A DNA stretch of 64,000 bases, taken from positions 124,001-188,000 of the IMG/VR virus record IMGVR_UViG_3300030202_003189; one strand, given 5' to 3'. The notes beneath the pieces are model-generated. The model searched no databases. It was not told the origin of the DNA and saw only the letters and a list, made by a program, of their open reading frames with translations. The translations under genes were made by a program, and so were the position numbers. Shown here one piece after another: positions 1,789 through 30,396 of this stretch (positions within the stretch are counted from its first letter, which is position 1; each line of letters starts with the position of its first letter).

Positions 1789-1830
1789 AGTTGTATTCAA
1801 TATAATAATACAAATAAAAAAAAATAGAAA

Positions 1831-2319: not shown

Positions 2320-2346
2320 ACATTATAACAAAAATATATTTCAATA

Positions 2347-2375: not shown

Positions 2376-2411
2376 ACAAAGTGTTACACTTTACTATTCT
2401 TAGTAAATAAA
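2371..2411 (+). promoter_or_regulatory. Putative promoter upstream of tail chaperone (same class as 23217)
   Basis: TGTTTACA, 16-bp spacer, TATTCT, then TAGTAAATAAA. Confidence 0.5.
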
Positions 2412-2431
2412 CTGTATTAAAAAAAAAAGTT

Positions 2432-3190
2432 ATGTCAGAAAACAAAAATGAATTTGTCGTACCATTCGACGTTATTGAACTTCCTTCAAAAGGGTTATTA
2501 TACCAAAATTGTGGTGGGTCAATAAAAATCGAGTATATGACTGCTGAGGATGAAAACATTCTAACCTCACCCAACCTAGTACAATCAGGCAAGGTTCTTG
2601 ATGTATTAATGGAACGTAAAATCAAAGAAGAAGGACTCAACGCTAAAGACCTTTTACTTGGTGATAGAAACGCAATTATGGTGTTTTTAAGGTCCACTGC
2701 TTATGGTGAGATGTATCCAGTTAAATTAACCGACCCTTCAACAGGAGAAGAATTTGAAACTGAAATCGATCTATCCAAATTAGAAGTAAAACAAATTGGT
2801 GCGTCTCCTGATGAAAACGGACTATTCTCCTTCGACTTACCAAAAACTAAAAAGACGATAAAATTTAGATTACTAACTGCACGAGATGAAGAAGACTTGG
2901 TTAAATCAGAAGAGAAAAGAAAGAAATTACTACAGAATAAAGTCTCACAACTCCTAACATCAAGATTAGCCCTACAAATTATGGACGTAGACGGCAATAA
3001 GGACAAAAGTTATATACAACAATTTGTTCAGTATTTACCAGCATTCGATTCTTTAGAATTAAGAAAATATATGGAAGAAATCGAGCCGGGTATAGATCTG
3101 AGGGCAGACGTGGAGTCTCCTTCAGGTGCCAGCTTTCGCGCTCTCGTTCCAATTACAGTCAGATTTTTTTGGCCTAACATCGAGTTATAA
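2432..3190 (+). CDS. Tail assembly chaperone / baseplate hub assembly protein (T4 gp26-like)
   Basis: LPSKG..Y, YMTAEDENIL, DLLLGDRNAI...LR..AYG, F.LP.....IKFRLLT..DE, C-terminal FFWP; lies between tube and tape measure. Confidence 0.8.
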   Translation: MSENKNEFVVPFDVIELPSKGLLYQNCGGSIKIEYMTAEDENILTSPNLVQSGKVLDVLMERKIKEEGLNAKDLLLGDRNAIMVFLRSTAYGEMYPVKLTDPSTGEEFETEIDLSKLEVKQIGASPDENGLFSFDLPKTKKTIKFRLLTARDEEDLVKSEEKRKKLLQNKVSQLLTSRLALQIMDVDGNKDKSYIQQFVQYLPAFDSLELRKYMEEIEPGIDLRADVESPSGASFRALVPITVRFFWPNIEL

Positions 3191-3371
3191 ACCGGAGTTA
3201 TTTAAGGAGATATATATCTTAGTTCATCATTGTGGATTTTCACGAGCAGATATAATGAAGATGCCAATATATGAAAGAAGGGTTTATCTGGGTGAATTAA
3301 CCAAGGAATTGGAAGAAAAACAGAAACAACAAAAAGCCGCTGAACGAAAGGCAAAATCAAAGAGGGGATAG
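3165..3371 (+). CDS. Tail assembly chaperone extension (GT-like), probably reached by frameshift from the upstream gene
   Basis: +1-frame ORF overlapping the end of 2432..3190 across a T7 run (3164-3170). Sequence EIYILVHHCGFSRADIMKMPIYERRVYL resembles chaperone T-segments. The called start at 3126 is a GTG inside the upstream gene. Confidence 0.7.
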   Translation, partial: FFGLTSSYKPELFKEIYILVHHCGFSRADIMKMPIYERRVYLGELTKELEEKQKQQKAAERKAKSKRG

Positions 3372-3388
3372 TCCCTCTTTTTTTTATA
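3360..3388 (+). terminator. Intrinsic terminator after chaperone extension
   Basis: AAGAGGGG-ATAG-TCCCTCTT hairpin followed by a poly-T run. Confidence 0.75.
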
Positions 3389-3392
3389 TTAG

Positions 3393-3400
3393 ATATTTAT
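3393..3400 (+). promoter_or_regulatory. ATATTTAT motif (candidate phage promoter)
   Basis: Directly after terminator, upstream of the next gene. Confidence 0.5.
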
Positions 3401-5016
3401 TGTTAAACACATACCTTTTGAAAACAGAAGAAAGAAGACATATACGTATAAAAGAACTAATGGGTATCGAAAAACCTCTATTAGAACAAGCACCTACCGC
3501 TGATTTATTTGGTACAAAACCAAGTAGTAAAGTGGCGGACCAAGGATTGCAAGATTTAGTTGGGGCAGAAGCCGCAGTTGCTGCAGGAAGAGAGTTAATG
3601 GGTACAACCCCAATTTCACAGGGATATATAAATAGAGTTGTATTAAAATACCTAGATGGGACGGGACCATTCGGACTAACTTATTCATTCTCAAAAGATA
3701 TAGTTGAGGGAAATACTGTTTATAAATCTAGTGACATTTTTTCTACAAAAAATGCTGAATATTTTGGTGTTACTTCAGTTGGTAATGCTATTATAGTTGA
3801 CGCTCCAACATCAGAAGAAATCGAAACAGACGATAAAGAGGAGGAAATAGAGAAAAAAGAAGAAGATAATAGAAATAAAAGATTAACACAGATATTCAAA
3901 AAAATAGGTATAAATTTTGACCATAAAGATCCATTTATTGTATATTTTAGAAAAGGTATCCGACCAATACTAAGAAGATTAAAGACAGAATTTCCTGAAT
4001 ATAACATAGAATTTCTTGACCAAGCAACAAATGTTGGAGTAGAAGATGTTATTGTTGATGGTTTCCTAACAACTAAATCTATATTATTTGAAGAGTATAA
4101 AGACTCTATGAGACACCTAATGGATTTACATAAGGGTAAAAAAGAATATAGTAAGGATAAAAAGATGGTAGGTATCCTAGATGGTGAAATTGAAAAAGAA
4201 AAAAAGAAACTTCTTAAAATAGTTAAACCACGATTTAAGAAAGTATTTAAGAAATATTTTACTTCATTAGACGACGATAAATTATTAAGACTAGGTATGT
4301 ACCTATCAACCTTTTTATCAGGACTTAAAAAAGATTATCCACAATATAATATAAATTATGGACAAATGAGAGTAACCGAGCAGGAAGAAAAGGAAGTTAC
4401 TCCAGAAAAATTATCCATAATCTTAGAACAAAATGTAACAGAAGTATGGATAGGTAGAAGATACCCTTGTAAGGTTAAGGTAGGTGAGGGTAAGGAAGCA
4501 AATAATACGATAAAGATATTAGATGTGGACTCCGAATATGTATTCAAAGGAGGTACAACTTCTAAAAAAGGACCCGGGGGAGGAGGAGAAGGTAATAAGT
4601 GTCCAGAAGGAAAAGTATGGAACGAAAAAACTAAAAAATGTGAAGAAAAACAGGGTTCATATACTTTCCCAAGTGGGTTAACTAATAGACAAGATAAAGG
4701 AAAAAAATTCTGGGTAACAATGGAGATAACTACTTCTCCAGCTAACTACCTAAAACAAGGATTTGAAACAGACGTACTACAACCCCATAACTCATTTGTG
4801 TATGTTGTAGAAATGTTATTTAATGGTTTTGAGTTTGAAAGAATAAACAGTAGTGCATTCCCAAACCAAAACTTTGAAGGTAAACAAATTAGATTTATTT
4901 TTGAAGATGACGTTGACGAAGTAGATTTTGGAAAAGAATACCAAATTGAAGTTAAAAAAGAGAACGAATCCCTTGGGTACTTAAATATAATAGTTACAGA
5001 TATAGTTAAAAGATAG
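3400..5016 (+). CDS. Hypothetical protein, possibly virion/head-associated (likely true start TTG 3418)
   Basis: 538-aa ORF. RIKELMGI..LLEQ leader, internal repeat LKTEFPEYNIEF / LKKDYPQYNINY, small CPEGKVWNEKTKKC motif. Confidence 0.6.
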   Translation: MLNTYLLKTEERRHIRIKELMGIEKPLLEQAPTADLFGTKPSSKVADQGLQDLVGAEAAVAAGRELMGTTPISQGYINRVVLKYLDGTGPFGLTYSFSKDIVEGNTVYKSSDIFSTKNAEYFGVTSVGNAIIVDAPTSEEIETDDKEEEIEKKEEDNRNKRLTQIFKKIGINFDHKDPFIVYFRKGIRPILRRLKTEFPEYNIEFLDQATNVGVEDVIVDGFLTTKSILFEEYKDSMRHLMDLHKGKKEYSKDKKMVGILDGEIEKEKKKLLKIVKPRFKKVFKKYFTSLDDDKLLRLGMYLSTFLSGLKKDYPQYNINYGQMRVTEQEEKEVTPEKLSIILEQNVTEVWIGRRYPCKVKVGEGKEANNTIKILDVDSEYVFKGGTTSKKGPGGGGEGNKCPEGKVWNEKTKKCEEKQGSYTFPSGLTNRQDKGKKFWVTMEITTSPANYLKQGFETDVLQPHNSFVYVVEMLFNGFEFERINSSAFPNQNFEGKQIRFIFEDDVDEVDFGKEYQIEVKKENESLGYLNIIVTDIVKR

Positions 5017-15200: not shown

Positions 15201-18200
15201 GGTGGAGGTGATGACTCAATCAAGAAAACCGGACATTTCAAAACACCAAAATATATATTAGGAAAATACGGTACAGTTGATTATAATTGGGATAAATGGG
15301 GGAATTGGGACTGGTTCTCATACTACAATCCAATTATTGCTGATGGAAAAATCTCCCAAGGAGATACTAACAGTGAAGACAAGAGCACTTATATGAAACC
15401 TGATCAGTTTAGTCCTCTGGCGGTTTTCTACTCCGACGGAACAAAATACAGTGATAGATCATCAAACGAAGCACCATACACGGATGTGCAAACTTTTTTA
15501 TTAGAAGATGCTTTATGGATGAGAAATGACTGGGAAAATGAATTATATAGTAGTCAATTCCCTGTCATGCCTGCTGATCCTTTAATTACCGCATACACTA
15601 CGAGAGTGGAGTTAGATAATACTGATAAGAATTCTAAATTATATACTAGTGGTGCAGATACTGCAGGTTATCGTGAAGTCTTAAACGATAAGGCGTCTGG
15701 GGTGGCAGACCCAAGAGCGGCCAGTAATATAGCACTAGGTTACCTATATATAAATAATTGTGGTAAATACTTTAGTTTAAGTTATATGCACAGGGCCCGT
15801 GATAATAAACCATGGGACCAATTTAACTTAGGAAAATTATTACACAACTCAGGAGGATACCTTAAATTACCACAGTCTGTAATTCTTACCTTAGGGTCGT
15901 TATTATATCGTTATGATGAAACAAATGATATAATAGATTGGCCAAACTATTTTAATAGAACAGGGAAGGGGAATACGGATCTTAATGGTCATGATTGGGG
16001 GGTAAATACCGTCATGTATCAAATACCACGAAAAGATGAAAGACCAATGCCAGAACCTTACTTTAGACTCGGCGGAGGTATGACCCCAGACACCAGGAGA
16101 AAGTTTGCCGCTTCTCAAGACATAGAACAATGGCGAACCGCTGGTGACCTCAATAACACATTACACTTTTTGGCGGGTGGGTGTGTGACCTCTTATGGGG
16201 ATAAAATGACCTTTGGTAGTTGGTGTGGTGGTGGTGCACTTAGCCTTGCAAGCATAACAAACGCTACCGCTTTCCATTTCTACAATAACCTCACAAATTT
16301 TTTCTGTCCTGGATGTAACATTCATGACGATAAAGGCGACTTTCCTAACTACGGATTTTATGAGAAATTACCAGAATGGTTAATAAACGCCCCAAAATAC
16401 ATAAGAGAGAGACTTAAGACAGAATTTGTGTCATGGGCTACAGGCACCAATCAACACGATAAAGGACATTTTGAAATGCACCCTTCATTCCCAGAATTAA
16501 AGAGGTTAATGAAAGAAACCACAACAGTATTAGGTTGTGACCCTAATGAGAGTGGGTGTACTCCAGGTCTTAAATCCGATGATGGAAATGTGCAAATGGG
16601 CCCAACAACAGTAGGACCTAGTTATACAGAGAATATGGCCCCAGACAGTAGATTATATACTACTTTTTATAGTACCGGAGACTATTGGCTTCATAACAAC
16701 GACACTGGTTCTACAGACGAAAATGATATTAACAGAGGTATATGTACTATGTACACTGAACCGTGGGGTGCTGTTCATCCATATTTTATGACAGGTCATG
16801 CATCCAATAAAGCAAAAACTTTTACGTCACGAGAAATGGAAGGACAACATCAAAAAACAGGTACTACTAAAAAGAAAACTCTCGTGATAAACTTCGTAAA
16901 TGCATTTTCAAATTTAAGGAGTTCTCAAAAAGGTACCACGAATTTTATACAGCGTAAGGGACCTGCAGACGTATCAAAGGCTGAATTTACCTATACATTA
17001 CCTTTATTATGGAATGGTTGGGTGAATATGAGATGGCAAGGTTCTGGGGAAGTACCTGATAAATACGGAACAGAAGGATTCTTTAATACCATAACAAAAG
17101 ATACAATAAAGAGTTATGAGGATTTACGAAAACACCACCAAGCTAAACACTCAAAGTCTCCAGGTTATGGTATTTATGAAACATGGGGAATGGCTAACGT
17201 ATATTACTATATTAGAAAAGCAAGTCACACGAGTAATGTAGTAGTAGGAAATGGTTTTAATAGGAAGTACATAAACAACTGGGATGGAATTGGGTCAATA
17301 GTAACAGCTTTTAATGATTCGATTCAGGGATTTAACCAAGTTGGAAATGAAGTTTATAAAAATATTCATTTTCAGAGTGAGGGGTGTGCGTTTAATTTTA
17401 ATCCTGGGACGGCTATGGGTAACCAAATACCAAGAAAAAGGTTTACTGCGGATCCTGCAGATGGAGACTGGGCATACTCCTATGAAATATATGAAGAAGC
17501 TGGACTAGGTGGAATTAATCAAGATACAGAAACATTTATTGGGGGAGGAGATGGAAACGGAGTTCAGTTCATTCCAAATTTTTACATACCTAAGATGCAA
17601 TACTTAGCAACAGCCAAAAATAACACCGCCGACTATGTTGCTAATGAATTATATATCCAAACCAAAGACTTCATGCAAAGAATAGTTGAAATAAAAAATC
17701 CTTCATGGAGATATTGGATGGGATGGAAAGAGAACGATAACTACGTAAACTCAGTATTTACAACTTCAACACACGCTGATAGGTTTTTTGGTGGATTTTT
17801 AGCTGCGATAAACGAATATCTCGCATCTCAAATTAAAAGTGGTGCACAACAGACGGCCCGAGTGGATAAATTGGATATATTAAACGATAACGACATTAAG
17901 TTAGATACTTATTTAACTGTTAAAAATCTACATGATAAATGGTTATGTGAACCACAACAATCGGCTAGAAATAATTTAACCACAGGAAATGCTAGAGAGG
18001 CTAGTAAAATTGGGTGGTTATTTGACCAATTTAGTTTTGTTGATAGGGCGTATAACGATATTAGACATAAATTTATTGACCCATCACCCCTCTTAAATCT
18101 TAAAAAGAATCCTAAAATGAGTTTATATACACTAATATATGACCTCATAGTACATAATCAATTTGAATTCTTCCCCTTACCTTCTAATATAGACTTTTCA

Positions 18201-20471
18201 CCAGAGGAGTTTAGACAGGCATTTACACCGTTTCTAACAGTTAATGAGAGAGACATGAATAAAAATCCTAGGTTCTATATTATGTATATGGGTGGTTTTT
18301 CAGATAGTCTTGATGTTGACAGCACAGATTACCAATATAGTAACGACGGATTTGATATTGATAATGAGTGTATAGATTGTCCAGCTGACTACTTCGGCGA
18401 AGAAATTTCTAAAAAATATGGTGATAGTTTAGTGTTCGGTCAACTATTGAGTGAGGGAAAAATGAAATGTGAGAGTGGTGAATGTGGTAGTGGTGATATT
18501 AAAAAAGCACCACAATTAGTACCACAAACTGGACATTGGGTATGTTGGAGTGAGGATGCGACAGGAGGTACATGTAAAGTTAGGACTCAGAATGTTACGG
18601 CTTTCAGAGTGGCCTTTGGACAAGATAACCAAAACTTCTTCAAGTCTGTTTCTCTAGATCAAGCAGAATTCCAAGAAACACAGGAATCGTTAGAACTGAT
18701 AGATGCTTTAGCAAAAGAAGAAGGTACTTCTAAGGATCCTATGTTAAAAGGACAAAACCTATTTAATGTATACCAAAAAAGAAGTTATACTTGTAGTGTA
18801 GATGCTTTCGGAATGATGAACATCCTACCTTTACAATACTTTCAACTAGATCAAGTCCCTATGTTTCATGGGGCGTACATTATAACAAATGTTGACCACA
18901 CCATCACACCAGGAGAGTTTCAAACAAATTTCAAAGGAACTAGAATATCACGTTCTGTTGTACCCTACGTATCCAATTTTATTACAAATACTCTTATTGT
19001 AGAGTCAGATAATCCAGAAATTAGTTATGGACAAGGTGATGTAAACTATACCGTTTTAGATGGAAATGTTGATAGGGTGGGTGTATGGATGGATAGTAAA
19101 GTTACTAACGCATCAATAAATAATTTTGTAGTCGGTGCGGGAGGTAATAGTGTGGGTATTGAACTAAATAGTAGTTGGCCTAATTATAAAAAGGATATTG
19201 GAAAAATCTCTCCAGTTAGTGGGAATAAAGTTACATGTGCGACAAAATATATGGGAGAAACATGGCATTGGCAACCAATTCATACAGGAACACAATATAG
19301 TCCAAATTCAAGATATTCATTAGATGAACTTAAAGAAGCGTGTGTTAAGTTAGCAAAAAAGAACGTTTTTATATTTATATGGTTATATTTTGTACCTACG
19401 AAATCTTATGTTGAGCCTATGTGTGGCGGAACAGGAATAGAAAGTTATGACCCTAAAAAAGATTGGGTTGATTGGGAGGCGAAAGGGGCTTCGGTACCAC
19501 CTAGTTTACCTCAGTTAGTGAAACAATTAAATGATGCTTGTAAGGCAGATTCTGAAGTTGGAAAAAATTGTATTGGTGCGGTAGAGTTTGATTTAGAGGC
19601 TCATTATACAAATACAAAATATGAAGGGAGTAATACTACGATGGTAGATGGGTGTTATACAGCGTGGAGGAATCAACAAGAGAATGTTTATGGATCTTAT
19701 AATAATGTTAAGAAAAAAGATTTGGCACTAAAAGTTATGGCAAAACTACGACAAGATTTACCATCTGATTGTCAAATAGGTATATCTACCATTATGAATA
19801 ATCCTGGTAAGGATGAAAAACTTAAATCAGAGATCAGAGATAACGATACTAACTATTGGAAAGGTGTGGTGTGTGCAGAATATGCATTACAATCAGACTA
19901 TGTTGCGGCTCAAGCATATTCTCACCCAAGATGTGAAGAAGGTAAAGATGAAATGTGTAAATCATGCACTTCAGATAATCAGTGTAGTGGAGACAATTTC
20001 TGTCAAGGAAGTCCTGATGGTATGTATGAGGGAGATAGACCTATGGGTAAAAGATTTTATACCAATAAAGTATGTCAAAGCCCTACATACAAGTGGGATG
20101 GATGGGCTGGTACAGGAGTTACTGGAAGACCTGGACTTTACGCTCGTTATGTTAAGGCCTTACAAGAGTCTACCTGGTTAGGTCACGACGCATCCTCAGG
20201 TAAACCAGAATTTGTTTGTGGTTTAGCAGGGTATGATAAGAAATGGAATAACCATACCCCTGCCGATGGGGCTACCGAAGATTGGAATGGATGTACCGAT
20301 GAGGTTGCTAATGGTATAAAAGCAAAAGAAGTAAGATATTGGTCATATCTTAATACTTTTAGTAATGGTGGTAAAGGAGGGGCAAGAGGAAGAATGGCAA
20401 ATCAAAATGGTGGAGATGGACTTTGGCCATACGGTTGGAGAGACTTTGTTAAGGCAAGAACAACCACATAA
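12231..20471 (+). CDS. Giant baseplate hub protein (gp27/gpD-like) with C-terminal GH18-like glycoside hydrolase domain
   Basis: N-terminal FGITDI.VK.N.SF.P.V.I.FVDIRG..L and PYPLF.L.LKGYYGK; hub C-terminal segment YTC.V...G...I.PLQYF.L..VPMF.GAY.IT.V.H.I.PG.F.T.F.G.R; last ~470 aa has AVEFDLE, DYVAAQAY, GLAGY, YWS. Confidence 0.7.
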   Translation: MGVNLIDPNEEIRKYVGGGADLQFPGNNNAGSVTVPPEDLVPYANLRVILPGRSVIVDNVADQVQNQAEIGFIVPSKLPPENKGKMGTSWTEIGGLSGFMKEKDGSYTVDGLGNLQREGTWGETFGITDISVKLNASFEPQVFISFVDIRGASLMEPGLNSPYAAFFHMPYPLFTLDLKGYYGKGISYKLHLMKFNSKFDAETGNFIINCEFIGFTFTYLADLAAIYSDVGPDLYGQYVTSDPNYFQQIGNAGSGSGKPWPEGTMTLGPYLNNIADMAAKMEAIENDEVVQDHKDMVDAVTSLKAVIAYWKGTTVNNIRKDGSDDIYTYDPHNETLTVTECLSASTKTLLADLECKKKRAANQNGYYHDLLLTIKGYADKTNNNPDVEKVLVEKASGAYRPYATSVFASIPDGAKTKINGPEGAPLPAVSLIKTKFDGPVKWDHDYNPNTPDAYGDDGGNKGGAVILSDYDDSTADAGTGANGCVQVIAKEFLDGAKESLAFAEMRLVELAKEKKIQEETVRLNSLVMPPTLENVFKLILNGVDGFNSTVTNVGKMANKQHQDDGRLRAKLRESGTGTDIKENQKQVFPFPLVYKTVTQGTSSTTNDSDATLRTVKIFPGEKNAGGGEYTYPDYTTDPFKWPEITLVERLIHTLIEKTRQINSTFSEEEGFSDDAGYVAATVEETPPSGNPYGKLTDVDKQIIPLVMLRTMLRLGNSNLLNSSGYGSIGKQLGNFTNMDMSDATGTYSWYNAHNYSETGDNELITELGRMEGETLIQGIEDDATNVRLDALYTKLTGNAVTQQVPSGTKGRSKAWQLYKEAGYDTRGSGISCVSTASDAQKEDTVGCHYMFTNFGNNTPVQQDGATGTILAGTYSFYGCNYKNQSGEQILNDYGYYLPNVEVELSGDINYDPCVTPETNSGASVCPDFWITGVGSSNNLVSSVEISGGLSEAVQNYYGFNTRAFGGNPKFTSDIWMMMALTGDMTSATEYGGGDDSIKKTGHFKTPKYILGKYGTVDYNWDKWGNWDWFSYYNPIIADGKISQGDTNSEDKSTYMKPDQFSPLAVFYSDGTKYSDRSSNEAPYTDVQTFLLEDALWMRNDWENELYSSQFPVMPADPLITAYTTRVELDNTDKNSKLYTSGADTAGYREVLNDKASGVADPRAASNIALGYLYINNCGKYFSLSYMHRARDNKPWDQFNLGKLLHNSGGYLKLPQSVILTLGSLLYRYDETNDIIDWPNYFNRTGKGNTDLNGHDWGVNTVMYQIPRKDERPMPEPYFRLGGGMTPDTRRKFAASQDIEQWRTAGDLNNTLHFLAGGCVTSYGDKMTFGSWCGGGALSLASITNATAFHFYNNLTNFFCPGCNIHDDKGDFPNYGFYEKLPEWLINAPKYIRERLKTEFVSWATGTNQHDKGHFEMHPSFPELKRLMKETTTVLGCDPNESGCTPGLKSDDGNVQMGPTTVGPSYTENMAPDSRLYTTFYSTGDYWLHNNDTGSTDENDINRGICTMYTEPWGAVHPYFMTGHASNKAKTFTSREMEGQHQKTGTTKKKTLVINFVNAFSNLRSSQKGTTNFIQRKGPADVSKAEFTYTLPLLWNGWVNMRWQGSGEVPDKYGTEGFFNTITKDTIKSYEDLRKHHQAKHSKSPGYGIYETWGMANVYYYIRKASHTSNVVVGNGFNRKYINNWDGIGSIVTAFNDSIQGFNQVGNEVYKNIHFQSEGCAFNFNPGTAMGNQIPRKRFTADPADGDWAYSYEIYEEAGLGGINQDTETFIGGGDGNGVQFIPNFYIPKMQYLATAKNNTADYVANELYIQTKDFMQRIVEIKNPSWRYWMGWKENDNYVNSVFTTSTHADRFFGGFLAAINEYLASQIKSGAQQTARVDKLDILNDNDIKLDTYLTVKNLHDKWLCEPQQSARNNLTTGNAREASKIGWLFDQFSFVDRAYNDIRHKFIDPSPLLNLKKNPKMSLYTLIYDLIVHNQFEFFPLPSNIDFSPEEFRQAFTPFLTVNERDMNKNPRFYIMYMGGFSDSLDVDSTDYQYSNDGFDIDNECIDCPADYFGEEISKKYGDSLVFGQLLSEGKMKCESGECGSGDIKKAPQLVPQTGHWVCWSEDATGGTCKVRTQNVTAFRVAFGQDNQNFFKSVSLDQAEFQETQESLELIDALAKEEGTSKDPMLKGQNLFNVYQKRSYTCSVDAFGMMNILPLQYFQLDQVPMFHGAYIITNVDHTITPGEFQTNFKGTRISRSVVPYVSNFITNTLIVESDNPEISYGQGDVNYTVLDGNVDRVGVWMDSKVTNASINNFVVGAGGNSVGIELNSSWPNYKKDIGKISPVSGNKVTCATKYMGETWHWQPIHTGTQYSPNSRYSLDELKEACVKLAKKNVFIFIWLYFVPTKSYVEPMCGGTGIESYDPKKDWVDWEAKGASVPPSLPQLVKQLNDACKADSEVGKNCIGAVEFDLEAHYTNTKYEGSNTTMVDGCYTAWRNQQENVYGSYNNVKKKDLALKVMAKLRQDLPSDCQIGISTIMNNPGKDEKLKSEIRDNDTNYWKGVVCAEYALQSDYVAAQAYSHPRCEEGKDEMCKSCTSDNQCSGDNFCQGSPDGMYEGDRPMGKRFYTNKVCQSPTYKWDGWAGTGVTGRPGLYARYVKALQESTWLGHDASSGKPEFVCGLAGYDKKWNNHTPADGATEDWNGCTDEVANGIKAKEVRYWSYLNTFSNGGKGGARGRMANQNGGDGLWPYGWRDFVKARTTT

Positions 20472-20515
20472 ACCCCCAAATCTAATTTAACTTTGTACTA
20501 AGAGAAATATAATTC

Positions 20516-20522
20516 TATTTAT
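20516..20522 (+). promoter_or_regulatory. TATTTAT motif (candidate phage promoter)
   Basis: 12 nt upstream of ATG 20535. Confidence 0.45.
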
Positions 20523-20534
20523 ATATAAACAATA

Positions 20535-20954
20535 ATGAACAATAATATATCTAAATCCTCACTGGTTTGTACTTTTGTTGAACATAAATCCTTAGAAAAA
20601 ATATACTCTAATTTAGAAAAAGGATTTGGTGTTGATACAAATAAGGTCTTTATATTTAATATTGAGGATAAAGAAAAATACTTAATAACGTATAAGATTA
20701 ATTTAGATAACGAACAACGAAAAGACTTCAAAAGAAGAATGAAACGAACGTTTCCGATACATAAAAAAGGGAAAACATTTTTCACAATTAACGGACTTAA
20801 TAAACTAATAGAAAAAATATATAAATTAACCCCAGGGAACATAAACTATAAGGACTATCAAATAAACTGGAAAGATTATGACAACAAATTAATAATGATA
20901 AAGGAAAAAGAATTATATATTATTGATCTAGATAGAGTTTTCCTAGATAAGTAA
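20535..20954 (+). CDS. Hypothetical phage protein
   Basis: 139-aa ORF with its own upstream TATTTAT motif; LVCTF, IHKK..TFFTINGLNKLI, INW..Y.N. Confidence 0.7.
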   Translation: MNNNISKSSLVCTFVEHKSLEKIYSNLEKGFGVDTNKVFIFNIEDKEKYLITYKINLDNEQRKDFKRRMKRTFPIHKKGKTFFTINGLNKLIEKIYKLTPGNINYKDYQINWKDYDNKLIMIKEKELYIIDLDRVFLDK

Positions 20955-20961
20955 TATTTAT
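20954..20961 (+). promoter_or_regulatory. ATATTTAT motif (candidate phage promoter)
   Basis: 18 nt upstream of ATG 20980. Confidence 0.5.
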
Positions 20962-20979
20962 AGTAAAAGAATTAGTATC

Positions 20980-21192
20980 ATGAAAAAAGAAAACAAGATA
21001 ACAAACGATGCGATAAATGAATTTTTAGGTGACGATTTAACAGTAAATGTTAATAAAGAAGATTGTGTTGACCAAGAATGTAAATTAAAATCTAAGGACG
21101 GATTAATAGAATCAACTAAAGTTATAAATAAAAAAGTCATTGTAGAAGATGGTAGAGAATTATTAAGAGAAGTAACTTTTAAGCACGAGTAA
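20980..21192 (+). CDS. Small hypothetical protein
   Basis: 70 aa, CVDQEC..K.KDGLIE..K...EDGRELLRE; preceded by ATATTTAT. Confidence 0.7.
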   Translation: MKKENKITNDAINEFLGDDLTVNVNKEDCVDQECKLKSKDGLIESTKVINKKVIVEDGRELLREVTFKHE

Positions 21193-21194
21193 AA

Positions 21195-22025
21195 ATGAAA
21201 AAATCATTGAATGAAGAGTTGAAAAGACACATGCAAATCGTTAATTACGCTAATGGTTTAGATAATGTCATTGAAGAAAAATTTAAGGTTACCTTCCAAG
21301 AACAAGAACCGGAAACTGAACCTGAAGAAGTAGAGGGTGAAGCAGAGGATGCACCAGCCACACCACCTACCCCACCTACACCCGGAGCAACACCTCCAAC
21401 ACCAGCAGCAACAGGAACACCAAAGTCAGCAACAGGTGGAAAGAATCTTCCAGCTAAACCTGATTTATCAGGAGGTAATAGACCAGTTCCACCAGCACCA
21501 CCAGCAGCAGGAGCACCAGCAGGAGCACCAGAAGCAGGAGCGACAACACCTCCACCTCCACCACCACCAGCACCTGGACAGGATGTAGAGGTAGATGAAG
21601 ATGTTGAGGAGATAGATGTTACCGATTTAGTAAATAATACAGAAGAAGTGGGTGATACAGTTGATAAATTTGCTAAACAACTAACCGATATAGAATCTAG
21701 ATTCAGCGAACTATCTGGACAATTAAGTAAAATGGATATGGTATTCCAAAAGATTGATAATATAGAAATGGAGATAGAAAAAATGATACCACCAACACCA
21801 GTAGAAAAAATGGAACTAAGATCATTAGATAGTTTTCCTTATAATCAACGACTAGATGATTATTTTGACCAGAAGAAAGGAGAATATAAAAGATTACGTG
21901 GAGTTGATTTAGACGTTAAACCACAACAAGAAAAAGAATATACTTTAACTGTGGGAGACACAGAAGAATGGGATGACAACTCAATAGGGAAATCATTTAA
22001 TCCCGACTATGACGAAAATAACTAA
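21195..22025 (+). CDS. Acidic, Pro-rich coiled-coil protein; candidate head scaffold/core protein
   Basis: MKKSLNEELKR leader, Pro/Ala low-complexity tract, EEIDVTDLV, heptad region, PTPVEKMELRSLDSFPYN. Confidence 0.55.
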   Translation: MKKSLNEELKRHMQIVNYANGLDNVIEEKFKVTFQEQEPETEPEEVEGEAEDAPATPPTPPTPGATPPTPAATGTPKSATGGKNLPAKPDLSGGNRPVPPAPPAAGAPAGAPEAGATTPPPPPPPAPGQDVEVDEDVEEIDVTDLVNNTEEVGDTVDKFAKQLTDIESRFSELSGQLSKMDMVFQKIDNIEMEIEKMIPPTPVEKMELRSLDSFPYNQRLDDYFDQKKGEYKRLRGVDLDVKPQQEKEYTLTVGDTEEWDDNSIGKSFNPDYDENN

Positions 22026-22040
22026 AAAAAATTAAAAAAA

Positions 22041-22778
22041 ATGGCAAGAGTAATAAAATTAAAAGAATCAGATATCACTAAGATCGTTAAAAAAATATTA
22101 AAAGAAAGAAAATTTGAAATGCCTGATTTATCAGGATTACCACCGGACCACTATCCAGACTTTGATAATCCTTTTGGTGATGGAACGACATGGAACACTG
22201 GCGGAGGTGGTGGAGGAACTACATGGGGAGGTAATAAAGGAGATAAATCTAAAACACATCCAGGTAGACGTGATTATGAAGGAAATGGTGGTGTAGAAAT
22301 TACTTTTGAGACCATGAAGGAGGCTTTAGGTGATTGTAGAACTATGGATGATTGTTTAAGAGGGTATGAGGCTTTATATAATAGAGGTAAAAAAGGAAAA
22401 ATACAAGGTATGCCAACACCACAAGAAATGAGTATGAAGGTTATGGAAATTGAAGAATCAGATCCAGATCCATCTCCAGCTATGTTTATATGGCTTCTAG
22501 TTGGTACTGCGGTAGCTTTAGGTATTCGTTGGATAAATGGTACTAATCCATGGACATGGAATTCTGATGTAACATTAAAAGAAAATATAAATTTAGTAGG
22601 GAAGTCAAAATCAGGTATTAATATTTATGAGTTTGATTATATTAATAAAAAATACGGTAACGGAAGATATCGTGGAGTTATGGCACAAGAAGTACCATCA
22701 GCGTCTTTTGTTGGACCAGAAGGTACTTTAATGGTAGACTATTCAAAATTAGATGTACAATTTGAAGAATTAAATTAA
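22041..22778 (+). CDS. Protein with LKESD leader, predicted transmembrane helix and C-terminal peptidase S74 intramolecular chaperone domain
   Basis: SDVTLKENI (Ser/Lys dyad spacing) at 22563, IYEFDY, GVMAQEV, VDYSKL; hydrophobic AMFIWLLVGTAVALGIRW just before it. Confidence 0.8.
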   Translation: MARVIKLKESDITKIVKKILKERKFEMPDLSGLPPDHYPDFDNPFGDGTTWNTGGGGGGTTWGGNKGDKSKTHPGRRDYEGNGGVEITFETMKEALGDCRTMDDCLRGYEALYNRGKKGKIQGMPTPQEMSMKVMEIEESDPDPSPAMFIWLLVGTAVALGIRWINGTNPWTWNSDVTLKENINLVGKSKSGINIYEFDYINKKYGNGRYRGVMAQEVPSASFVGPEGTLMVDYSKLDVQFEELN

Positions 22779-22780
22779 CT

Positions 22781-23134
22781 ATGGCACGAATAATAAAATT
22801 AAGAGAATCAGATATCACTAATATTGTTAAGAAAATATTAATGGAAGAAAAAGGTAAGCGTAAGGATGATAAATGTCAGGAAATTAAAGTAAGGAGTGTT
22901 AAAGATGTTAAACGTTTATTAGGAAACGCTAAAACTATGGACGAGTTGGTTACTAACTATAAAAAATTATATAGTGGCCAATCTAATAAAAAAGGTATGC
23001 CAACACCAAAAGAAGTTATGGAGAGAAGTAAACAAATAACTGACGCAGGTCCTAAAGAACCAGTTATTGCGATGTTTTGGTGGATATTTGCCGTTGTTAT
23101 AGGTCTGATGATAATACTTTGTATCGATTGGTAA
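22781..23134 (+). CDS. Paralog of 22041..22778 lacking the S74 domain; C-terminal transmembrane helix
   Basis: 54 of the first 60 nt match the upstream gene; shares LG...TMD....Y..LY, GMPTP.E and AMF.W. Confidence 0.75.
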   Translation: MARIIKLRESDITNIVKKILMEEKGKRKDDKCQEIKVRSVKDVKRLLGNAKTMDELVTNYKKLYSGQSNKKGMPTPKEVMERSKQITDAGPKEPVIAMFWWIFAVVIGLMIILCIDW

Positions 23135-23174
23135 CACAAGATACTTGATACAAACAATAAAAAAGTATAATATT

Positions 23175-23204
23175 AACCCAACCCTAAAAAAGTTGGGTTT
23201 TTAT
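23175..23204 (+). terminator. Intrinsic terminator before the replication block
   Basis: AACCCAAC-N9-GTTGGGTT followed by TTTAT. Confidence 0.7.
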
Positions 23205-23216
23205 GTATACAGCATG

Positions 23217-23256
23217 TTTACTTTATAATATTTGTTTTGTATACTTAGTAAGTAAA
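23217..23256 (+). promoter_or_regulatory. Putative promoter for ssb-recA-exonuclease operon
   Basis: TTTACT (23217-22), 17-bp spacer, TATACT (23240-45), then TAGTAAGTAAA; near-copy at 2373-2411. Confidence 0.6.
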
Positions 23257-23290
23257 AATATTAATTAATTAGTTAAAAAAAACAAAAAAC

Positions 23291-24109
23291 ATGAGTAATA
23301 TACTAGATTCAATTCTTAAGCAGTACGAGTCCAACAAGTCTGGAGTAGGGACCGAAAAAAAGAAAACAGACCTTAGAAAATATTTCGCACCCTTTTTACC
23401 AAAAGGAGAGGCGAATGGAGAAAGAACAGTTAGAATTTTACCTCCTAAAGATGGGGCATCACCATTCCAAGAAGCTTGGTTCCATGAGGTACAAATTGAT
23501 GGTAAATGGCAAAAACTTTATGACCCAGGAAAAAATGATAACGAAAGAAGTCCTATTACTGAAGTTAATGAAGCATTGTTAATGACAGGAGACCCAGAAG
23601 ATAAAGTTCTTGCAAGACAATACAGACCAAGAAAATTTTATGTTGTTAGAGTTATCGATAGAGATAAAGAAGAAGAAGGGGTTAAATTCTGGAGATTTAA
23701 GCACAATTATAAAGGAGATGGGATAATGGACAAATTAATTCCACTATTTCAAAAGAAAGGAGATATTACCGACCCAAGAGAGGGGAGAGATATTAACCTA
23801 ATTCTTAAAGCGGTTAAATTACCAAGTGGTCATGGAACTTACACAACAGTATCAACAATAATGACTGAAGATCCTTCTATGTTAACTACTGATACAGAAA
23901 AAGCTAAAAATTGGATGGCTAATACTGAAACATTTAGAGATGTTTATGTAAAGAAAGATGTAGACTTTCTTGAAAAGGTAGCTAAAGGAGAAAATCCTTA
24001 TGAAAGAAAAGAGGAAAGTACACCAAAACCAACTTCTAGTGTTAGCGATACAACAATATCAGAATTAGATAAAGGTACTGAGATTAACATGGATGATATG
24101 CCATTTTAA
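23291..24109 (+). CDS. ssb: Single-stranded DNA-binding protein (T4 gp32-like)
   Basis: RILPP...SPF....FH, VIDRD.EEEGVKFW, DITDP.EGRD, acidic C-terminal tail DDMPF; upstream of recombinase. Confidence 0.85.
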   Translation: MSNILDSILKQYESNKSGVGTEKKKTDLRKYFAPFLPKGEANGERTVRILPPKDGASPFQEAWFHEVQIDGKWQKLYDPGKNDNERSPITEVNEALLMTGDPEDKVLARQYRPRKFYVVRVIDRDKEEEGVKFWRFKHNYKGDGIMDKLIPLFQKKGDITDPREGRDINLILKAVKLPSGHGTYTTVSTIMTEDPSMLTTDTEKAKNWMANTETFRDVYVKKDVDFLEKVAKGENPYERKEESTPKPTSSVSDTTISELDKGTEINMDDMPF

Positions 24110-24120
24110 TAATTATAGAT

Positions 24121-25119
24121 ATGGCTAAATCAATAAAGAAAAAAACATTCTCATTAGAAGACCTACAAGGAAAGTATAGTACAAAGGCAAAATACAAAGA
24201 AGATAGTTTCTTTGATGTTGGCGAAGCATTTTACAAAGCTTGTGGAATACCAGGACCAGCAGAAGGACATATAAATGTATTTTTAGGACATTCTGACACT
24301 GGAAAAACCACGGCTTTAGTTAGGTCAGCTATAGACGCTCAAAAAAAAGGAAAATTACCCGTTTTTATAATAACTGAACAGAAATGGGATTTCCAACACG
24401 CAAAATTAATGGGTTTTGATTGTGAATTAAACGCAACAGGAGAGTGGAGTGGTACATTCTTATTTAATGATGGATTTTCTTATATAGAACAAATTACTGA
24501 TTATATAAATGAATTAATAGATGAACAACAAAAAGGAAATATACCTTATGATTTAGTTTTCTTTTGGGATTCGGTAGGTTCAGTACCTTGTAAAATGACT
24601 TTTGAGGGTAAAGGTGGAAAAATGCACAATGCGAGTACATTAGCAGATAAAATAGGAATGGGGATTAATCAAAGAATTACAGGATCAAGAAAAGAAAGTG
24701 AAAAGTTTACAAATACCTTAATAATTGTTAATCAACCATGGGTAGAATTACCAGATAATCCATTTAGTCAACCAAGAATTAAAATGAAAGGAGGGGAGGC
24801 AATATTTCTAAACTCCACACTAGTCTTTTTATTTGGAAATCAAAAAAATTCTGGAATATCAAAAATAAACGCCACTAAAAATGGACGTAAAGTAGCTTTT
24901 GCTACTAGAACTAAAGTCTCCATACTTAAAAATCATGTAAATGGTATTGGTTTTTCTGATGGTAGAGTAATCGTTACACCACATAGTTTTATTAATGATG
25001 ACGCTAACGATATAAAGAAGTACAAAGAAAGTCACTCAAGTTATTGGGTTGAGCAATTTGAAAAAGCTGGTGAGAAAGTAGATGATGGAAGTTTCGAACT
25101 AGTAGAATCCGATGTTTAA
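24121..25119 (+). CDS. recA: RecA/UvsX-like recombinase
   Basis: Walker A GHSDTGKTT, FIITEQK, Walker B FFWDSVG, IIVNQ, KGGEA, KNHVNG. Confidence 0.9.
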   Translation: MAKSIKKKTFSLEDLQGKYSTKAKYKEDSFFDVGEAFYKACGIPGPAEGHINVFLGHSDTGKTTALVRSAIDAQKKGKLPVFIITEQKWDFQHAKLMGFDCELNATGEWSGTFLFNDGFSYIEQITDYINELIDEQQKGNIPYDLVFFWDSVGSVPCKMTFEGKGGKMHNASTLADKIGMGINQRITGSRKESEKFTNTLIIVNQPWVELPDNPFSQPRIKMKGGEAIFLNSTLVFLFGNQKNSGISKINATKNGRKVAFATRTKVSILKNHVNGIGFSDGRVIVTPHSFINDDANDIKKYKESHSSYWVEQFEKAGEKVDDGSFELVESDV

Positions 25120-25137
25120 CCTTTTAATTACAATGAG

Positions 25138-26169
25138 TTGAGACGTAGAAATAATCAAAAAAATCTTGAAACCCTTGTAGTAGATGGAGATGCTCTTCTA
25201 AAAAGATCATTCTTCGGGGCTAAAAATGTTTTTAATGAAAAAAAAGAACATATCGGCGGACTATACCAATTTATCAATATCCTTAGAAAAACTTTATCAG
25301 AGAAGTATTATAATAAAGTTGTTGTTTTTTGGGATGGGGTAAATGGTAATTTAGCCCGACGTAAGATATATCCAAATTATAAATTGAATAGAAAAAAGAG
25401 TAGTAATTATGATTCAGACGCTTTTTTACGTCAGAAATTAAGAACACAACAATACTTAGAAGAATTATATATTAGACAATACGTTCATAAAGACACAGAA
25501 GCGGATGACCTTATTGCTGAATATTGTATAAACAAAAAGGAAAAAGAAATAATAACAATTTATACCGCAGATAGGGACCTCGTACAATTAATCAATGAAA
25601 AAGTTAGAGTATTTCTTTTAGATAAAAAGGAGTTAGTTACAGAGGATACCATTTTAGTAACAAGAGAATTAGAATACCTCCCCAAAAACGTATGTTTAAT
25701 TAAGATTCTTTTAGGAGACGCGTCCGATAACATATTAGGGATAAAGGGACTATCACCAAAAAGATTGGGTGAAATATCCCCAGAACTTAAAAGTCGAAAA
25801 GTTAACCTACAGGAAATTAAAGATATAGAATACGATGGGGATAATTGGAGAGTACGTAATGTATTAAATAACATTAAAACCGGAACAAGTAATGGAGGGG
25901 TATTTGGGGACGAACTCTATGAGATAAATAATAAGATAATAAGTTTAGAAGAACCTTTTATTGATGAAGATATTAGGAAAGATGTAAAAGATTTAGTAAA
26001 CTTAAATCTAGATCCTTCAGGACGAGATTACAAAAATGTAATAAAAATGATGATAGAAGATGGGTTAGTTAATGTGATACCAGCTTCATATGAAGATCAG
26101 TCAGAATTTTTAATACCATTTATAACACTTAAAAATAATGAAACAAAAAATGGAAAAGACAAGAAGTAA
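25138..26169 (+). CDS. 5'-3' exonuclease / flap endonuclease (Pol I N-terminal / T4 RNase H-like)
   Basis: LVVDGD, VFWDG, R..IYP.YK.NR, EADDLIA, TADRDLVQL, GDASDNI.GIKG (H3TH). Confidence 0.92.
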   Translation: MRRRNNQKNLETLVVDGDALLKRSFFGAKNVFNEKKEHIGGLYQFINILRKTLSEKYYNKVVVFWDGVNGNLARRKIYPNYKLNRKKSSNYDSDAFLRQKLRTQQYLEELYIRQYVHKDTEADDLIAEYCINKKEKEIITIYTADRDLVQLINEKVRVFLLDKKELVTEDTILVTRELEYLPKNVCLIKILLGDASDNILGIKGLSPKRLGEISPELKSRKVNLQEIKDIEYDGDNWRVRNVLNNIKTGTSNGGVFGDELYEINNKIISLEEPFIDEDIRKDVKDLVNLNLDPSGRDYKNVIKMMIEDGLVNVIPASYEDQSEFLIPFITLKNNETKNGKDKK

Positions 26170-26614
26170 ATACACAGATAAATTTGAGTTTATATTAAGA
26201 ATTAATGGGAATATAGTTTGCCAAAGATACTTTAATATTAGAGGGTATAACGATAACAGTAAAAACTCTATGGAATTAAGATGGGAATTAGGGGAGATTG
26301 TGGATACAATACAAAGTTATTTGAAACAAAAAAGTGAAGATTTTCTTTGGGCAAATCACAATCCCTTCTCTAATAGAAACTCCGTAGTTAAAGACACAAA
26401 AAAAGAGGAAGAAGACTACTTTACCTTCGAAATCAGAGTGGATGGTAAGGTTATTATTATACAGAGATTCACAGGAATGGTTTTCCCACCTAAAATTAGA
26501 TATTCAGTAAACATAAAAAGCTTGATACCATCTATAATTTCAAAGATTCAGAGGTGTTTAAGTAAGAGAAAATACCTTAATGTTAAAAGATATTACAACC
26601 ACCAAACTACGTAG
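26138..26614 (+). CDS. Hypothetical phage protein
   Basis: 158-aa ORF overlapping exonuclease end; FEF.L.INGNIVCQRYFN, FPPKIRYSVNI. Confidence 0.7.
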   Translation: MKQKMEKTRSKYTDKFEFILRINGNIVCQRYFNIRGYNDNSKNSMELRWELGEIVDTIQSYLKQKSEDFLWANHNPFSNRNSVVKDTKKEEEDYFTFEIRVDGKVIIIQRFTGMVFPPKIRYSVNIKSLIPSIISKIQRCLSKRKYLNVKRYYNHQTT

Positions 26615-26630
26615 AATAAAGATAAATAAT

Positions 26631-26638
26631 ATATTTAT
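26631..26638 (+). promoter_or_regulatory. ATATTTAT motif (candidate phage promoter)
   Basis: 19 nt upstream of helicase ATG. Confidence 0.45.
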
Positions 26639-26657
26639 TATTAAATAAATTAATAAA

Positions 26658-28031: not shown

Positions 28032-28047
28032 GAAAAATTTATAAAAA

Positions 28048-30373: not shown

Positions 30374-30381
30374 ATATTTAT
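30374..30381 (+). promoter_or_regulatory. ATATTTAT motif (candidate phage promoter)
   Basis: 15 nt upstream of gp25-like ATG, at the replication-to-structural boundary. Confidence 0.55.
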
Positions 30382-30396
30382 AATAAAGAATTATAA

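What the first reader, a model, noticed from the sequence alone, without database searches (positions are those of the whole stretch)
20980..23134. Family of N-terminal LxE-type leaders suggesting a capsid-targeting and protease-cleavage address system
Seen: consecutive genes begin MKKSLNEELKR, MARVIKLKESDITKIVKKILKE and MARIIKLRESDITNIVKKILMEE. Similar leaders occur at 3418 (RIKELMGIEKPLLEQ) and 980 (MSRKLLYE). Known: T4 prohead protease gp21 cleaves after (L/I)xE, and T4 internal proteins carry short cleaved capsid-targeting sequences. Inference: a portable amphipathic leader loads diverse cargo into the head for ejection into the host.
Basis: partly seen in the sequence, partly recalled or inferred. 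Interest (0 to 1): 0.6.

Follow-up and report, generated by a model that had tools for sequence, protein, structure and literature searches.

The report
Portable N-terminal tag on phage proteins
Two neighbouring genes of an uncultured marine T4-like giant phage start with the same 22-residue tag, which heads thousands of unrelated phage proteins in metagenomes and probably sends them into the assembling phage head, where a protease would cut it off.

Summary
Both begin with the same 22-residue peptide, M-A-R-[VI]-I-K-L-x-E-S-D-I-T-x-I-V-K-K-I-L-x-E. They are paralogs along all of P5, so this pair alone shows no portability.

The same peptide heads at least six unrelated cargo families in this 231-kb genome. 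It matches 2,217 protein clusters in public metagenomes, almost always at residue 1. It is absent from Pfam, PHROGs, GenBank phages, T4 and the searched literature.

P3 (21195-22025) is unrelated to P4/P5. It carries a different conserved N-terminal motif. The "leader" at 3418 is mostly 5' UTR, and the one at 980 is not a member.

The phage is T4-like. It encodes a gp21-family prohead protease, and its capsid protein has an invariant L-I-N-E site aligned with T4's L-T-E cleavage site. The tag's two invariant glutamates both sit in (L/I/V)-x-E, and conservation stops after the second. P4 also shares a short motif found otherwise only in the head scaffold.

Best reading (about 0.45): a T4-CTS-like prohead-targeting propeptide, new in sequence. 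There is no protein-level evidence. A docking tag for another virion part remains a serious rival.

The parts
20955..20962 (+). Promoter-like motif TATTTATA, 18 nt before the ATG of P2. It probably drives P2-P3-P4-P5 as one tightly packed unit.
   Evidence: [AG]TATTTAT[AT] is 17-19x enriched upstream of genes. It sits 11-26 nt before the ATGs of the terminase, portal, protease, tail tube and baseplate wedge genes, and before several tag-bearing genes. The late or structural timing is inferred.
20980..21192 (+). P2, a 70-aa ORF with no leader. A small ORF holds this position before P3 in distant relatives.
21195..22025 (+). P3, 276 aa. It has a conserved N-terminal motif (residues 1-18; family consensus L-L-N-E-E-L-K-R-F-x-x-I-x-x-Y), a variable Pro-rich acidic linker and a conserved coiled-coil C-terminal domain. 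It is a conserved member of the hub/giant-protein module, not a P4/P5 relative.
   Evidence: E7, E8, R11 nearly invariant, Y18 invariant. (synteny giant-small-P3-gp32). (only a weak match, 9 bits, to motif B).
22041..22106 (+). Tag A on P4 (residues 1-22), with candidate cleavage motifs L-K-E at 7-9 and L-K-E at 20-22.
22227..22277 (+). Short motif G-G-N-K-G-D-x-S-K-T-H-x-x-x-x-D-Y in the P4 linker (residues 63-79). It is otherwise found only twice, in the scaffold-like head protein.
   Evidence: There are three occurrences in the six-frame genome, and the motif is conserved in P4 orthologs.
22476..22538 (+). Predicted transmembrane helix of P4 (residues 146-166).
   Evidence: helix 146-166.
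22563..22778 (+). C-terminal Peptidase_S74 intramolecular-chaperone domain of P4. S175-D176 is conserved at the usual self-cleavage position.
   Evidence: (26 bits against a cut-off of 22), (S175 and D176 nearly invariant). The self-cleavage position is from my own knowledge of endosialidase-type S74 domains.
22781..22846 (+). Tag A on P5 (residues 1-22).
22847..23134 (+). Remainder of P5: a basic linker, an 'MPTP' helix block homologous to P4, and a transmembrane helix at the C-terminus. It has no S74 domain.
   Evidence: The P4-like plus P5-like pair recurs in a related contig, L009.
3360..3462 (+). Terminator hairpin with T-run (3360-3388), promoter-like ATATTTATT (3393-3401) and the likely true start ATG at 3460.

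Best explanation
Tag A is the 22-residue N-terminus of P4 and P5. Its consensus across metagenomes is M-K-K-I-I-R-L-T-E-S-D-L-T-R-I-V-K-R-V-I-x-E-Q. It looks like a short strand followed by an amphipathic helix. I read it as a portable address and propeptide that recruits accessory proteins into the assembling T4-type prohead, by binding the scaffold core or the inner shell. The gp21-family protease would then remove it by cutting after the invariant glutamates (L-x-E at 7-9, h-h-x-E at 19-22).

P4 and P5 are lineage-specific accessory genes inserted between the conserved P3 gene and gp32. They add a membrane helix, and P4 also adds a trimerising, self-cleaving S74 domain. They may therefore be packaged membrane-active proteins or membrane tethers for head assembly.

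Shown: the tag family, its N-terminal position, its diverse cargo, the protease gene, the aligned capsid cleavage site, and the shared scaffold motif. Inferred: targeting, cleavage, packaging and ejection.
For: 1. T4-type head maturation is present. There is a PF03420 protease at genome 67683-68372, 35% identical to T4 gp21. The head module carries terminase, portal and a gp23-like capsid protein. The capsid's L-I-N-E aligns with T4's F-L-T-E and is invariant in 80 relatives. That T4 gp21 cuts after L/I-x-E and that a 10-residue CTS loads unrelated internal proteins comes from PMC9026906 and PMC3012670.

2. E9 and E22 are invariant in the nine genomic tags. E9 is invariant and L7, L12 and E22 are at least 90% conserved in 130 diverse hits. 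Residues 19-20 are hydrophobic (V or I at 19 in 114 of 120, I, V or L at 20 in all 120), and the residue after E22 is Q in 67 of 120. This matches the capsid site.

3. In P4 orthologs the tag is nearly invariant, and conservation stops at E22 before a hypervariable linker. Synonymous codon differences (116 of 304 identical-residue pairs) show that selection acts on the protein.

4. The tag is portable. There are six unrelated cargo families in this genome. Two other jumbo relatives carry 8 and 11 tag genes, often in tandem. Other contigs carry the tag on different cargo.

5. There are links to the head. P4's G-x-K-G-D-x-S-K-T-[RH]..D-Y motif occurs elsewhere only twice, in the scaffold-like protein upstream of the capsid gene. 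Head-module proteins have tagged paralogs (65442 and 203415, E 1e-29; 68377 and 30284, E 8e-6). L-[LI]-x-E-[QETS] is 9x enriched in the first 40 residues and marks head-module genes and the protease itself.

6. A second terminal tag, motif B, lies only within 25 residues of a protein end (nine of nine). It always follows [LI]-x-E, and its R-M-[KR]-x-L-M-G core matches the conserved scaffold C-terminus R-M-K-D-L-M-[SGA]-K of 80 relatives.

7. Tag genes share the upstream motif used by structural genes.
Against: There are no protein data: no virion proteome, no N-terminal mapping and no cultured relative. The tag is absent from 50,697 GenBank phages and from the two nearest cultured phages, which have the same protease family.

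The tag is twice as long as the T4 CTS, unlike it in sequence, and absent from T4.

P4, P5 and gene 21328 have transmembrane helices. P4 has an S74 domain typical of tail fibres. Other cargo includes LysM, LRR and MORN domains, Cys-rich modules and Pro/Thr linkers. That mix would also fit surface-exposed proteins.

Forty-seven of the 149 top hits carry a second copy, some of them internal or C-terminal. P4 and P5 sit beside the tail module.

(L/I)-x-E alone is only 1.6x enriched at N-termini, the same as (L/I)-x-K. The motif-B profile does not score the scaffold tails significantly. The motif-B regular expression and its p-values are post hoc.
Confidence: 0.45

Rival explanations
1. The tag is a docking or oligomerisation peptide for another virion or assembly component, such as the capsid exterior, neck, baseplate or fibres. 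It would anchor small binding modules on the particle and would not be cleaved.
For: P4 and gene 21328 end in S74 domains, which in PHROGs occur mostly in tail fibre, baseplate or 'virion structural' families. Cargo includes LysM, LRR and MORN domains, Cys-rich modules and Pro/Thr linkers. P4 and P5 lie directly after the hub/giant-protein tail module. Tandem, internal and C-terminal copies suit an avidity tag. The shared late-type upstream motif fits any virion protein.
Against: This reading does not explain why the two invariant residues are glutamates in (L/I/V)-x-E, or why conservation stops exactly at E22-Q as at the capsid maturation site. It does not explain the scaffold-specific motif in P4. 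Head-module proteins are themselves Cys-rich and low in complexity, so that composition is not specific to the exterior.
Confidence: 0.27
2. The tag is an amphipathic helix that acts in the infected cell, not the virion. It could bind membrane, or serve as a handle for a host or phage factor such as a chaperone, protease or secretion route.
For: The predicted helix over residues 9-24 has a hydrophobic face (L12, I15, V16, I19, L20) flanked by Lys and Arg. Three carriers are membrane proteins. Most cargo is small, orphan and fast-evolving, like host-takeover genes.
Against: Tag genes carry the upstream motif of structural operons rather than that of the replication genes. The links to the scaffold and head module and the match to the cleavage motif are unexplained. 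Most carriers have no membrane segment.
Confidence: 0.13
3. There is no shared function. The resemblance reflects only gene duplication (P4/P5) or a nucleotide-level signal at gene starts.
For: P4 and P5 are paralogs over the whole of P5, and gene 21328 is a third paralog.
Against: Five further cargo families show no similarity beyond the tag. There are 2,217 clusters in metagenomes with unrelated cargo. Synonymous codon turnover is heavy, including TCA/AGT serine switches, so the conserved object is the peptide.
Confidence: 0.03

Closest known systems
T4 capsid targeting sequence (CTS) of internal proteins IPI, IPII and IPIII, plus the Alt and gp24 propeptides, removed by prohead protease gp21
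   Same: A short N-terminal peptide is conserved on otherwise unrelated, fast-evolving accessory proteins. It ends in (L/I)-x-E. The phage has a gp21-family protease and a T4-like capsid protein with an aligned maturation site. Genes for such proteins lie outside the head module; T4 alt sits next to the hub genes.
   Different: The tag is 22-24 residues rather than 10 and has two candidate sites. It shows no sequence similarity to the T4 CTS, and T4 has no match. Many more carriers exist per genome (8-11). The tag also occurs internally, in tandem and at C-termini, and some carriers have membrane helices and S74 domains. Function is untested here.
Scaffold C-terminal coat-binding tails (as in P22) and encapsulin cargo-loading peptides
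   Same: This concerns motif B. It is a terminal peptide (N- or C-terminal) whose core R-M-[KR]-x-L-M-G matches the conserved extreme C-terminus of this lineage's scaffold protein. That suggests cargo is loaded by mimicking the scaffold's shell-binding end.
   Different: The similarity is by consensus only, and the profile score is not significant. That the scaffold tail binds the shell is assumed from other phages, not shown for T4-like ones.
Propeptides of head proteins in jumbo phages phiKZ and SPN3US, cut by gp21-like proteases
   Same: A giant myophage with a diverged gp21-type protease and many head-associated proteins cut after Glu (PMC9026906, PMC5694885).
   Different: Those propeptides are long and not a shared portable motif, and their cleavage logo is reported as different (A/S/G-x-E). 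Here a single compact tag is reused.
Peptidase_S74 intramolecular chaperone domains of endosialidases and tail fibres, and the eukaryotic MYRF
   Same: The P4 C-terminus matches PF13884 and keeps the Ser-Asp at the domain's start.
   Different: The domain follows a transmembrane helix in a 245-aa protein, not a fibre shaft. In MYRF the order is domain then membrane helix; here it is the reverse.

Membership tests
T4-type capsid targeting sequence / gp21-processed propeptide system | The phage encodes a gp21-family (Peptidase_S77) prohead protease | tested here: met
   PF03420 at 88.3 bits (cut-off 27) at genome 67683-68372. It is 35% identical to T4 gp21 over 146 residues.
T4-type capsid targeting sequence / gp21-processed propeptide system | A short conserved peptide at the extreme N-terminus of otherwise unrelated proteins | tested here: met
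   Eight of nine genomic copies start at the Met. 143 of 149 database hits start at residues 1-6. Cargo families are unrelated.
T4-type capsid targeting sequence / gp21-processed propeptide system | The peptide ends in the protease's cleavage motif, (L/I)-x-E | tested here: met
   E9 and E22 are invariant, with L/I at 7 and L/I/V at 20. The same form, L-I-N-E, occurs at the capsid protein site aligned with the T4 gp23 site. This is the sequence motif only.
T4-type capsid targeting sequence / gp21-processed propeptide system | Sequence homology to the T4 CTS | tested here: not met
   The tag profile finds nothing in the T4 genome at E<=10, while it finds 10 places in the phage's own genome. T4 propeptide N-termini read share only their length and the L-x-E ending.
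T4-type capsid targeting sequence / gp21-processed propeptide system | Tag-dependent packaging into proheads and removal by the protease | not testable with these tools
   This needs virion or procapsid proteomics or reconstitution.
Peptidase_S74 intramolecular chaperone domain (P4 C-terminus) | Match to PF13884 above the curated cut-off | tested here: met
   26.0 bits against a cut-off of 22, residues 175-221. Paralog 21328 scores 21.1 bits, just below the cut-off.
Peptidase_S74 intramolecular chaperone domain (P4 C-terminus) | A conserved serine at the domain's N-terminal boundary, where self-cleavage occurs | tested here: met
   S175, D176, L179, K180, E181, N182 and I183 are nearly invariant in 20 homologs. 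Self-cleavage itself is not testable here.
Scaffold-tail mimic (motif B: P3-like and other termini) | Significant similarity between motif B and scaffold C-termini | tested here: inconclusive
   The shared core is R-M-[KR]-x-L-M-G. Profile scores on the scaffold tails are about 0-1.6 bits. P3 itself scores only 9 bits against motif B.

The most novel reading that the evidence does not exclude
An uncultured lineage of marine jumbo T4-like phages, probably infecting Bacteroidota, uses a modular address code of at least three terminal tags. These are tag A, a scaffold-tail mimic (motif B) and an L-L-x-E-Q propeptide, each built around the prohead protease's (L/I)-x-E site. Together they would load roughly a tenth of the proteome into the head for delivery into the host, including membrane-spanning S74-trimerised proteins and Cys-rich orphan proteins. 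Tag A would then be one of the most widespread undescribed protein-sorting signals in the virosphere, and a ready-made cargo-loading handle.
Probability: 0.3. Interest if true: 0.75.

Novelty: new variant of a known kind. Interest (0 to 1): 0.62.

Why it matters
If tag A is a capsid-targeting propeptide, it extends the T4 CTS principle to a large uncultured phage lineage. That principle is currently known from a handful of T-even proteins. It would also give a first functional label, 'packaged or ejected head protein', to thousands of orphan metagenomic proteins.

It would mark candidate anti-defence and host-takeover cargo in marine phages. It would also offer a compact, testable handle for loading foreign proteins into T4-like capsids.

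Even if the partner turns out not to be the prohead, a 22-residue module with one invariant and three near-invariant (>=90%) residues, heading over 2,000 protein clusters and missing from Pfam and PHROGs, is worth a family description.

Tried and rejected
- Word-index search limited to residues 1-40 of P4 found only 3 proteins and was uninformative.
- The AlphaFold2 monomer of P4 is poor (pLDDT 48). I used it only for helix positions and ran no fold search.
- The ESM Atlas look-up of P5 gave no usable hit.
- PDB profile searches for the P3 and P4 families gave only sub-threshold coiled-coil matches.
- Pfam and PHROGs found nothing on the tag or on most cargo.
- GenBank phages have no tag, nor do the nearest cultured relatives, Flavobacterium phage immuto and Microcystis phage Mel-JY01.
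- A literature string search for tag fragments found no papers.
- The sigma-70 and terminator scan of 20400-23400 was no better than shuffles.
- I rejected a nucleotide-level signal, pure paralogy, and the idea that all five quoted leaders form one family.
- Read laying and the look-up of sequencing runs were not used. No other genetic code was needed.
Full report
**Context.** The window is bases 124001-188000 of a single 231,285-bp viral contig with 34% GC. Nearly all its genes lie on the + strand. It is a contractile-tailed jumbo phage.

- Window 1-3190 holds the sheath, tube and baseplate hub. Giant proteins of up to 2,746 aa follow.
- Window 23291-29958 holds gp32-like SSB, a UvsX-like recombinase, an exonuclease, a DnaB-like helicase and ribonucleotide reductase. 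Baseplate wedge and fibre-sized genes come after that.
- Elsewhere the genome has a T4-like head module with large terminase, portal, a Peptidase_S77 (gp21-family) protease and a gp23-like major capsid protein.
- The nearest cultured phages are only distant: Microcystis phage Mel-JY01, Flavobacterium phage immuto and Rhodothermus phage RM378.

**The observation.** Region 20980-23134 holds four tightly packed ORFs.

- P2 is 70 aa and has no leader.
- P3 is 276 aa and begins MKKSLNEELKR.
- P4 is 245 aa and P5 is 117 aa. Both begin M-A-R-[VI]-I-K-L-[KR]-E-S-D-I-T-[KN]-I-V-K-K-I-L-x-E.
- P4 and P5 are paralogs along all of P5. They share the tag, a helical block around 'MPTP' and a transmembrane helix. 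P4 has in addition a Gly-rich insert and a C-terminal Peptidase_S74 domain.
- P3 is unrelated to both.
- The N-terminus at 980 matches neither motif profile.

**The tag is a real, portable family.** P4's first 26 residues alone find further N-termini in the genome. I built a profile from nine copies. Eight of them sit at the initiator Met: P4, P5 and genome starts 21328, 21962, 22356, 42032, 206615 and 225871. One is internal, near 10422 on the minus strand.

- E9 and E22 are invariant in these nine copies. Each has L, I or V two residues before it.
- Codons differ freely where residues agree: 116 synonymous differences among 304 identical-residue pairs, including TCA/AGT serine. The peptide, not the DNA, is conserved.
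- After the tag is removed, only P4, P5 and 21328 resemble one another. The other five cargos are unrelated.
- In P4 orthologs of 38-82% identity the tag is almost invariant. Conservation stops at E22, before a linker that varies in length and sequence.

**Outside this genome.** The 30-column profile matches 2,217 representative clusters at E<=1e-3 among 1.84 billion proteins.

- Of the top 149 hits, 143 carry the tag at residues 1-6. Their lengths run from 29 to 1,072 aa, and 47 have a second copy that is tandem, internal or C-terminal.
- Across 130 of them, E9 is invariant and M1, L7, L12 and E22 are at least 90% conserved. The consensus is M-K-K-I-I-R-L-T-E-S-D-L-T-R-I-V-K-R-V-I-x-E-Q.
- The residue after E22 is Q in 67 of 120.
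- Cargo is almost entirely without Pfam matches. The few exceptions are S74 (four proteins) and single cases of LysM, MORN, LRR and QueF.
- Two other near-complete jumbo relatives, of 229 and 273 kb, carry 8 and 11 tag genes, often in tandem. Smaller viral contigs carry the tag on other cargos.
- The tag is absent from the two cultured relatives, from T4, from 50,697 GenBank phage records, from Pfam and PHROGs and from the searched literature.

**Why a head-targeting propeptide is the best reading.**

- T4 gp21 cuts after L/I-x-E, and a 10-residue CTS loads unrelated internal proteins into the prohead core (PMC9026906, PMC3012670).
- This phage's protease is 35% identical to gp21.
- Its capsid protein carries L-I-N-E followed by Q exactly where T4 gp23 has L-T-E followed by A. 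L-I-N-E is invariant in 80 relatives.
- The end of the tag, V/I-I/V-x-E-Q, has the same form.
- L-[LI]-x-E-[QETS] is 9-fold enriched in the first 40 residues of this phage's proteins (15 found against 1.6 expected). It marks the genes between portal and capsid, and the protease's own N-terminus.
- P4's linker holds the motif G-x-K-G-D-x-S-K-T-[RH]..D-Y. In all six frames of the genome this occurs otherwise only twice, both times in the acidic scaffold-like protein just upstream of the capsid gene. The motif is conserved in P4 orthologs.
- Head-module proteins have tagged paralogs elsewhere in the genome.
- Tag genes, including the P2-P5 unit, lie behind the motif [AG]TATTTAT[AT]. This motif precedes the terminase, portal, protease, tube and wedge genes. 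It is absent in its strict form before the replication genes (only the helicase has a weaker TATTTATT variant).

**A second tag.** Motif B is [LI]-x-E-[EQ]-h-x-R-M-K-x-L-M-G.

- Four genes start with it, and five proteins end with a variant of it. None of 61,722 interior positions matches. The pattern was derived after the fact, so the p-values are generous.
- Its core equals the extreme C-terminus of the scaffold protein, Y-E-N-P-Q-F-L-R-M-K-D-L-M-[SGA]-K-[IL]-K, which is conserved in 80 relatives. The profile score for this resemblance is not significant.
- P3's conserved N-terminus has the family consensus L-L-N-E-E-L-K-R-F-x-x-I-x-x-Y. It resembles only the first half of motif B, at 9 bits.
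- P3 is a conserved gene. The order giant protein, small ORF, P3, gp32 holds in distant relatives that lack P4 and P5. P4 and P5 are therefore a lineage-specific insertion at the border of the tail and replication modules. T4 alt, a packaged protein, sits at a comparable border.

**What weakens the reading.**

- Nothing here shows a protein being packaged or cut.
- P4, P5 and 21328 have membrane helices, and S74 domains are typical of fibres.
- LysM and LRR domains, Cys-rich modules and Pro/Thr linkers would also suit exposed proteins. The head-module proteins of this phage are, however, equally Cys-rich and low in complexity.
- Plain (L/I)-x-E is no more enriched at N-termini than (L/I)-x-K.
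- C-terminal and internal tag copies are not predicted by a simple propeptide model, although a polyprotein-like cut would accommodate them.
- I therefore put the targeting-and-cleavage model at about 0.45, a docking tag for another virion component at about 0.27, an intracellular or membrane handle at about 0.13, and no shared function at about 0.03.

**Verdict.** The T4-CTS analogy is the best-supported mechanism and is directly testable. The tag itself appears to be undescribed.

Noticed in passing
window 20516-20523, 20955-20962, 1782-1789, 30375-30382, 58019-58026 (genome-wide list): The motif [AG]TATTTAT[AT] lies 11-26 nt upstream of many start codons and is 17-19x enriched. It precedes structural genes and tag genes, while among the replication genes only the helicase has a weaker TATTTATT variant. 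It is a candidate late promoter. It reads as the reverse complement of T4's TATAAATA but lies on the coding strand.
   Followed up: partly
genome 32545, 24407, 41157, 11475(-) (N-termini); C-termini of 17503-20538, 20592-21272, 38911-39681, 65442-67079, 203415-206612 (outside the window): A second terminal tag, motif B ([LI]-x-E-[EQ]-h-x-R-M-K-x-L-M-G), is found only within 25 residues of protein ends. Its core matches the conserved C-terminus of the scaffold protein in 80 relatives (R-M-K-D-L-M-[SGA]-K).
   Followed up: partly
window 22227-22277 and genome 70925-72334 (scaffold-like protein, residues about 173-192 and 225-241): The short motif G-x-K-G-D-x-S-K-[TS]-[RH]..D-Y occurs only three times in the genome: twice in the scaffold-like head protein and once in P4. 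Some P4 orthologs carry two copies.
   Followed up: partly
genome 33021-36809 (outside the window; L004:4021-7809): A 1,262-aa phage protein has an N-terminal signal-like sequence and a C-terminal type IX secretion sorting domain (Por_Secre_tail, E 8e-12). This hints at a Bacteroidota host and a secreted phage-encoded protein.
   Followed up: no
genome 42564-46421 (outside the window; L004:13564-17421): A 1,285-aa orphan protein ends in a DUF192 domain (E 3e-24).
   Followed up: no
genome 22729-22738, inside tag gene 22356-23219: A run of ten N lies between two copies of the same 18-residue stretch (M-D-N-W-W-G-N-D-W-G-K-V-A-D-D-G-G-G). This looks like an assembly gap inside a tandem repeat, so the length of this gene is uncertain.
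   Followed up: no
L015 and L016 (IMG/VR contigs), and P0097, P0108, P0111: These are natural fusions in the order tag, membrane helix, S74 domain, second tag, second cargo, all in one reading frame. Protease cuts at the tags would make them behave like small polyproteins.
   Followed up: partly
window 12231-20471, 7632-11906, 32657-47637, 51126-55373: There is an unusual concentration of giant ORFs (2,746, 1,424, 1,508, 1,730, 1,370 and 1,415 aa) in the tail and fibre region. The ones scanned (1,424 aa and its 867-aa neighbour) have no PHROG match; the rest were not scanned. The pair of giant genes around a 105-aa ORF is syntenic in distant relatives.
   Followed up: no
window 2432-3190 and 3126-3371: The baseplate-hub ORF is followed by an overlapping 81-aa ORF in another frame that ends at a strong terminator (3360-3388). 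This could be a separate small gene or a frameshifted extension.
   Followed up: no
genome 9-56 kb (outside the window): This region is dense in Cys-rich, low-complexity orphan proteins that carry tag A, motif B or an N-terminal L-L-x-E-Q. Several are paralogs of head-module proteins (65442 with 203415; 68377 with 30284).
   Followed up: partly
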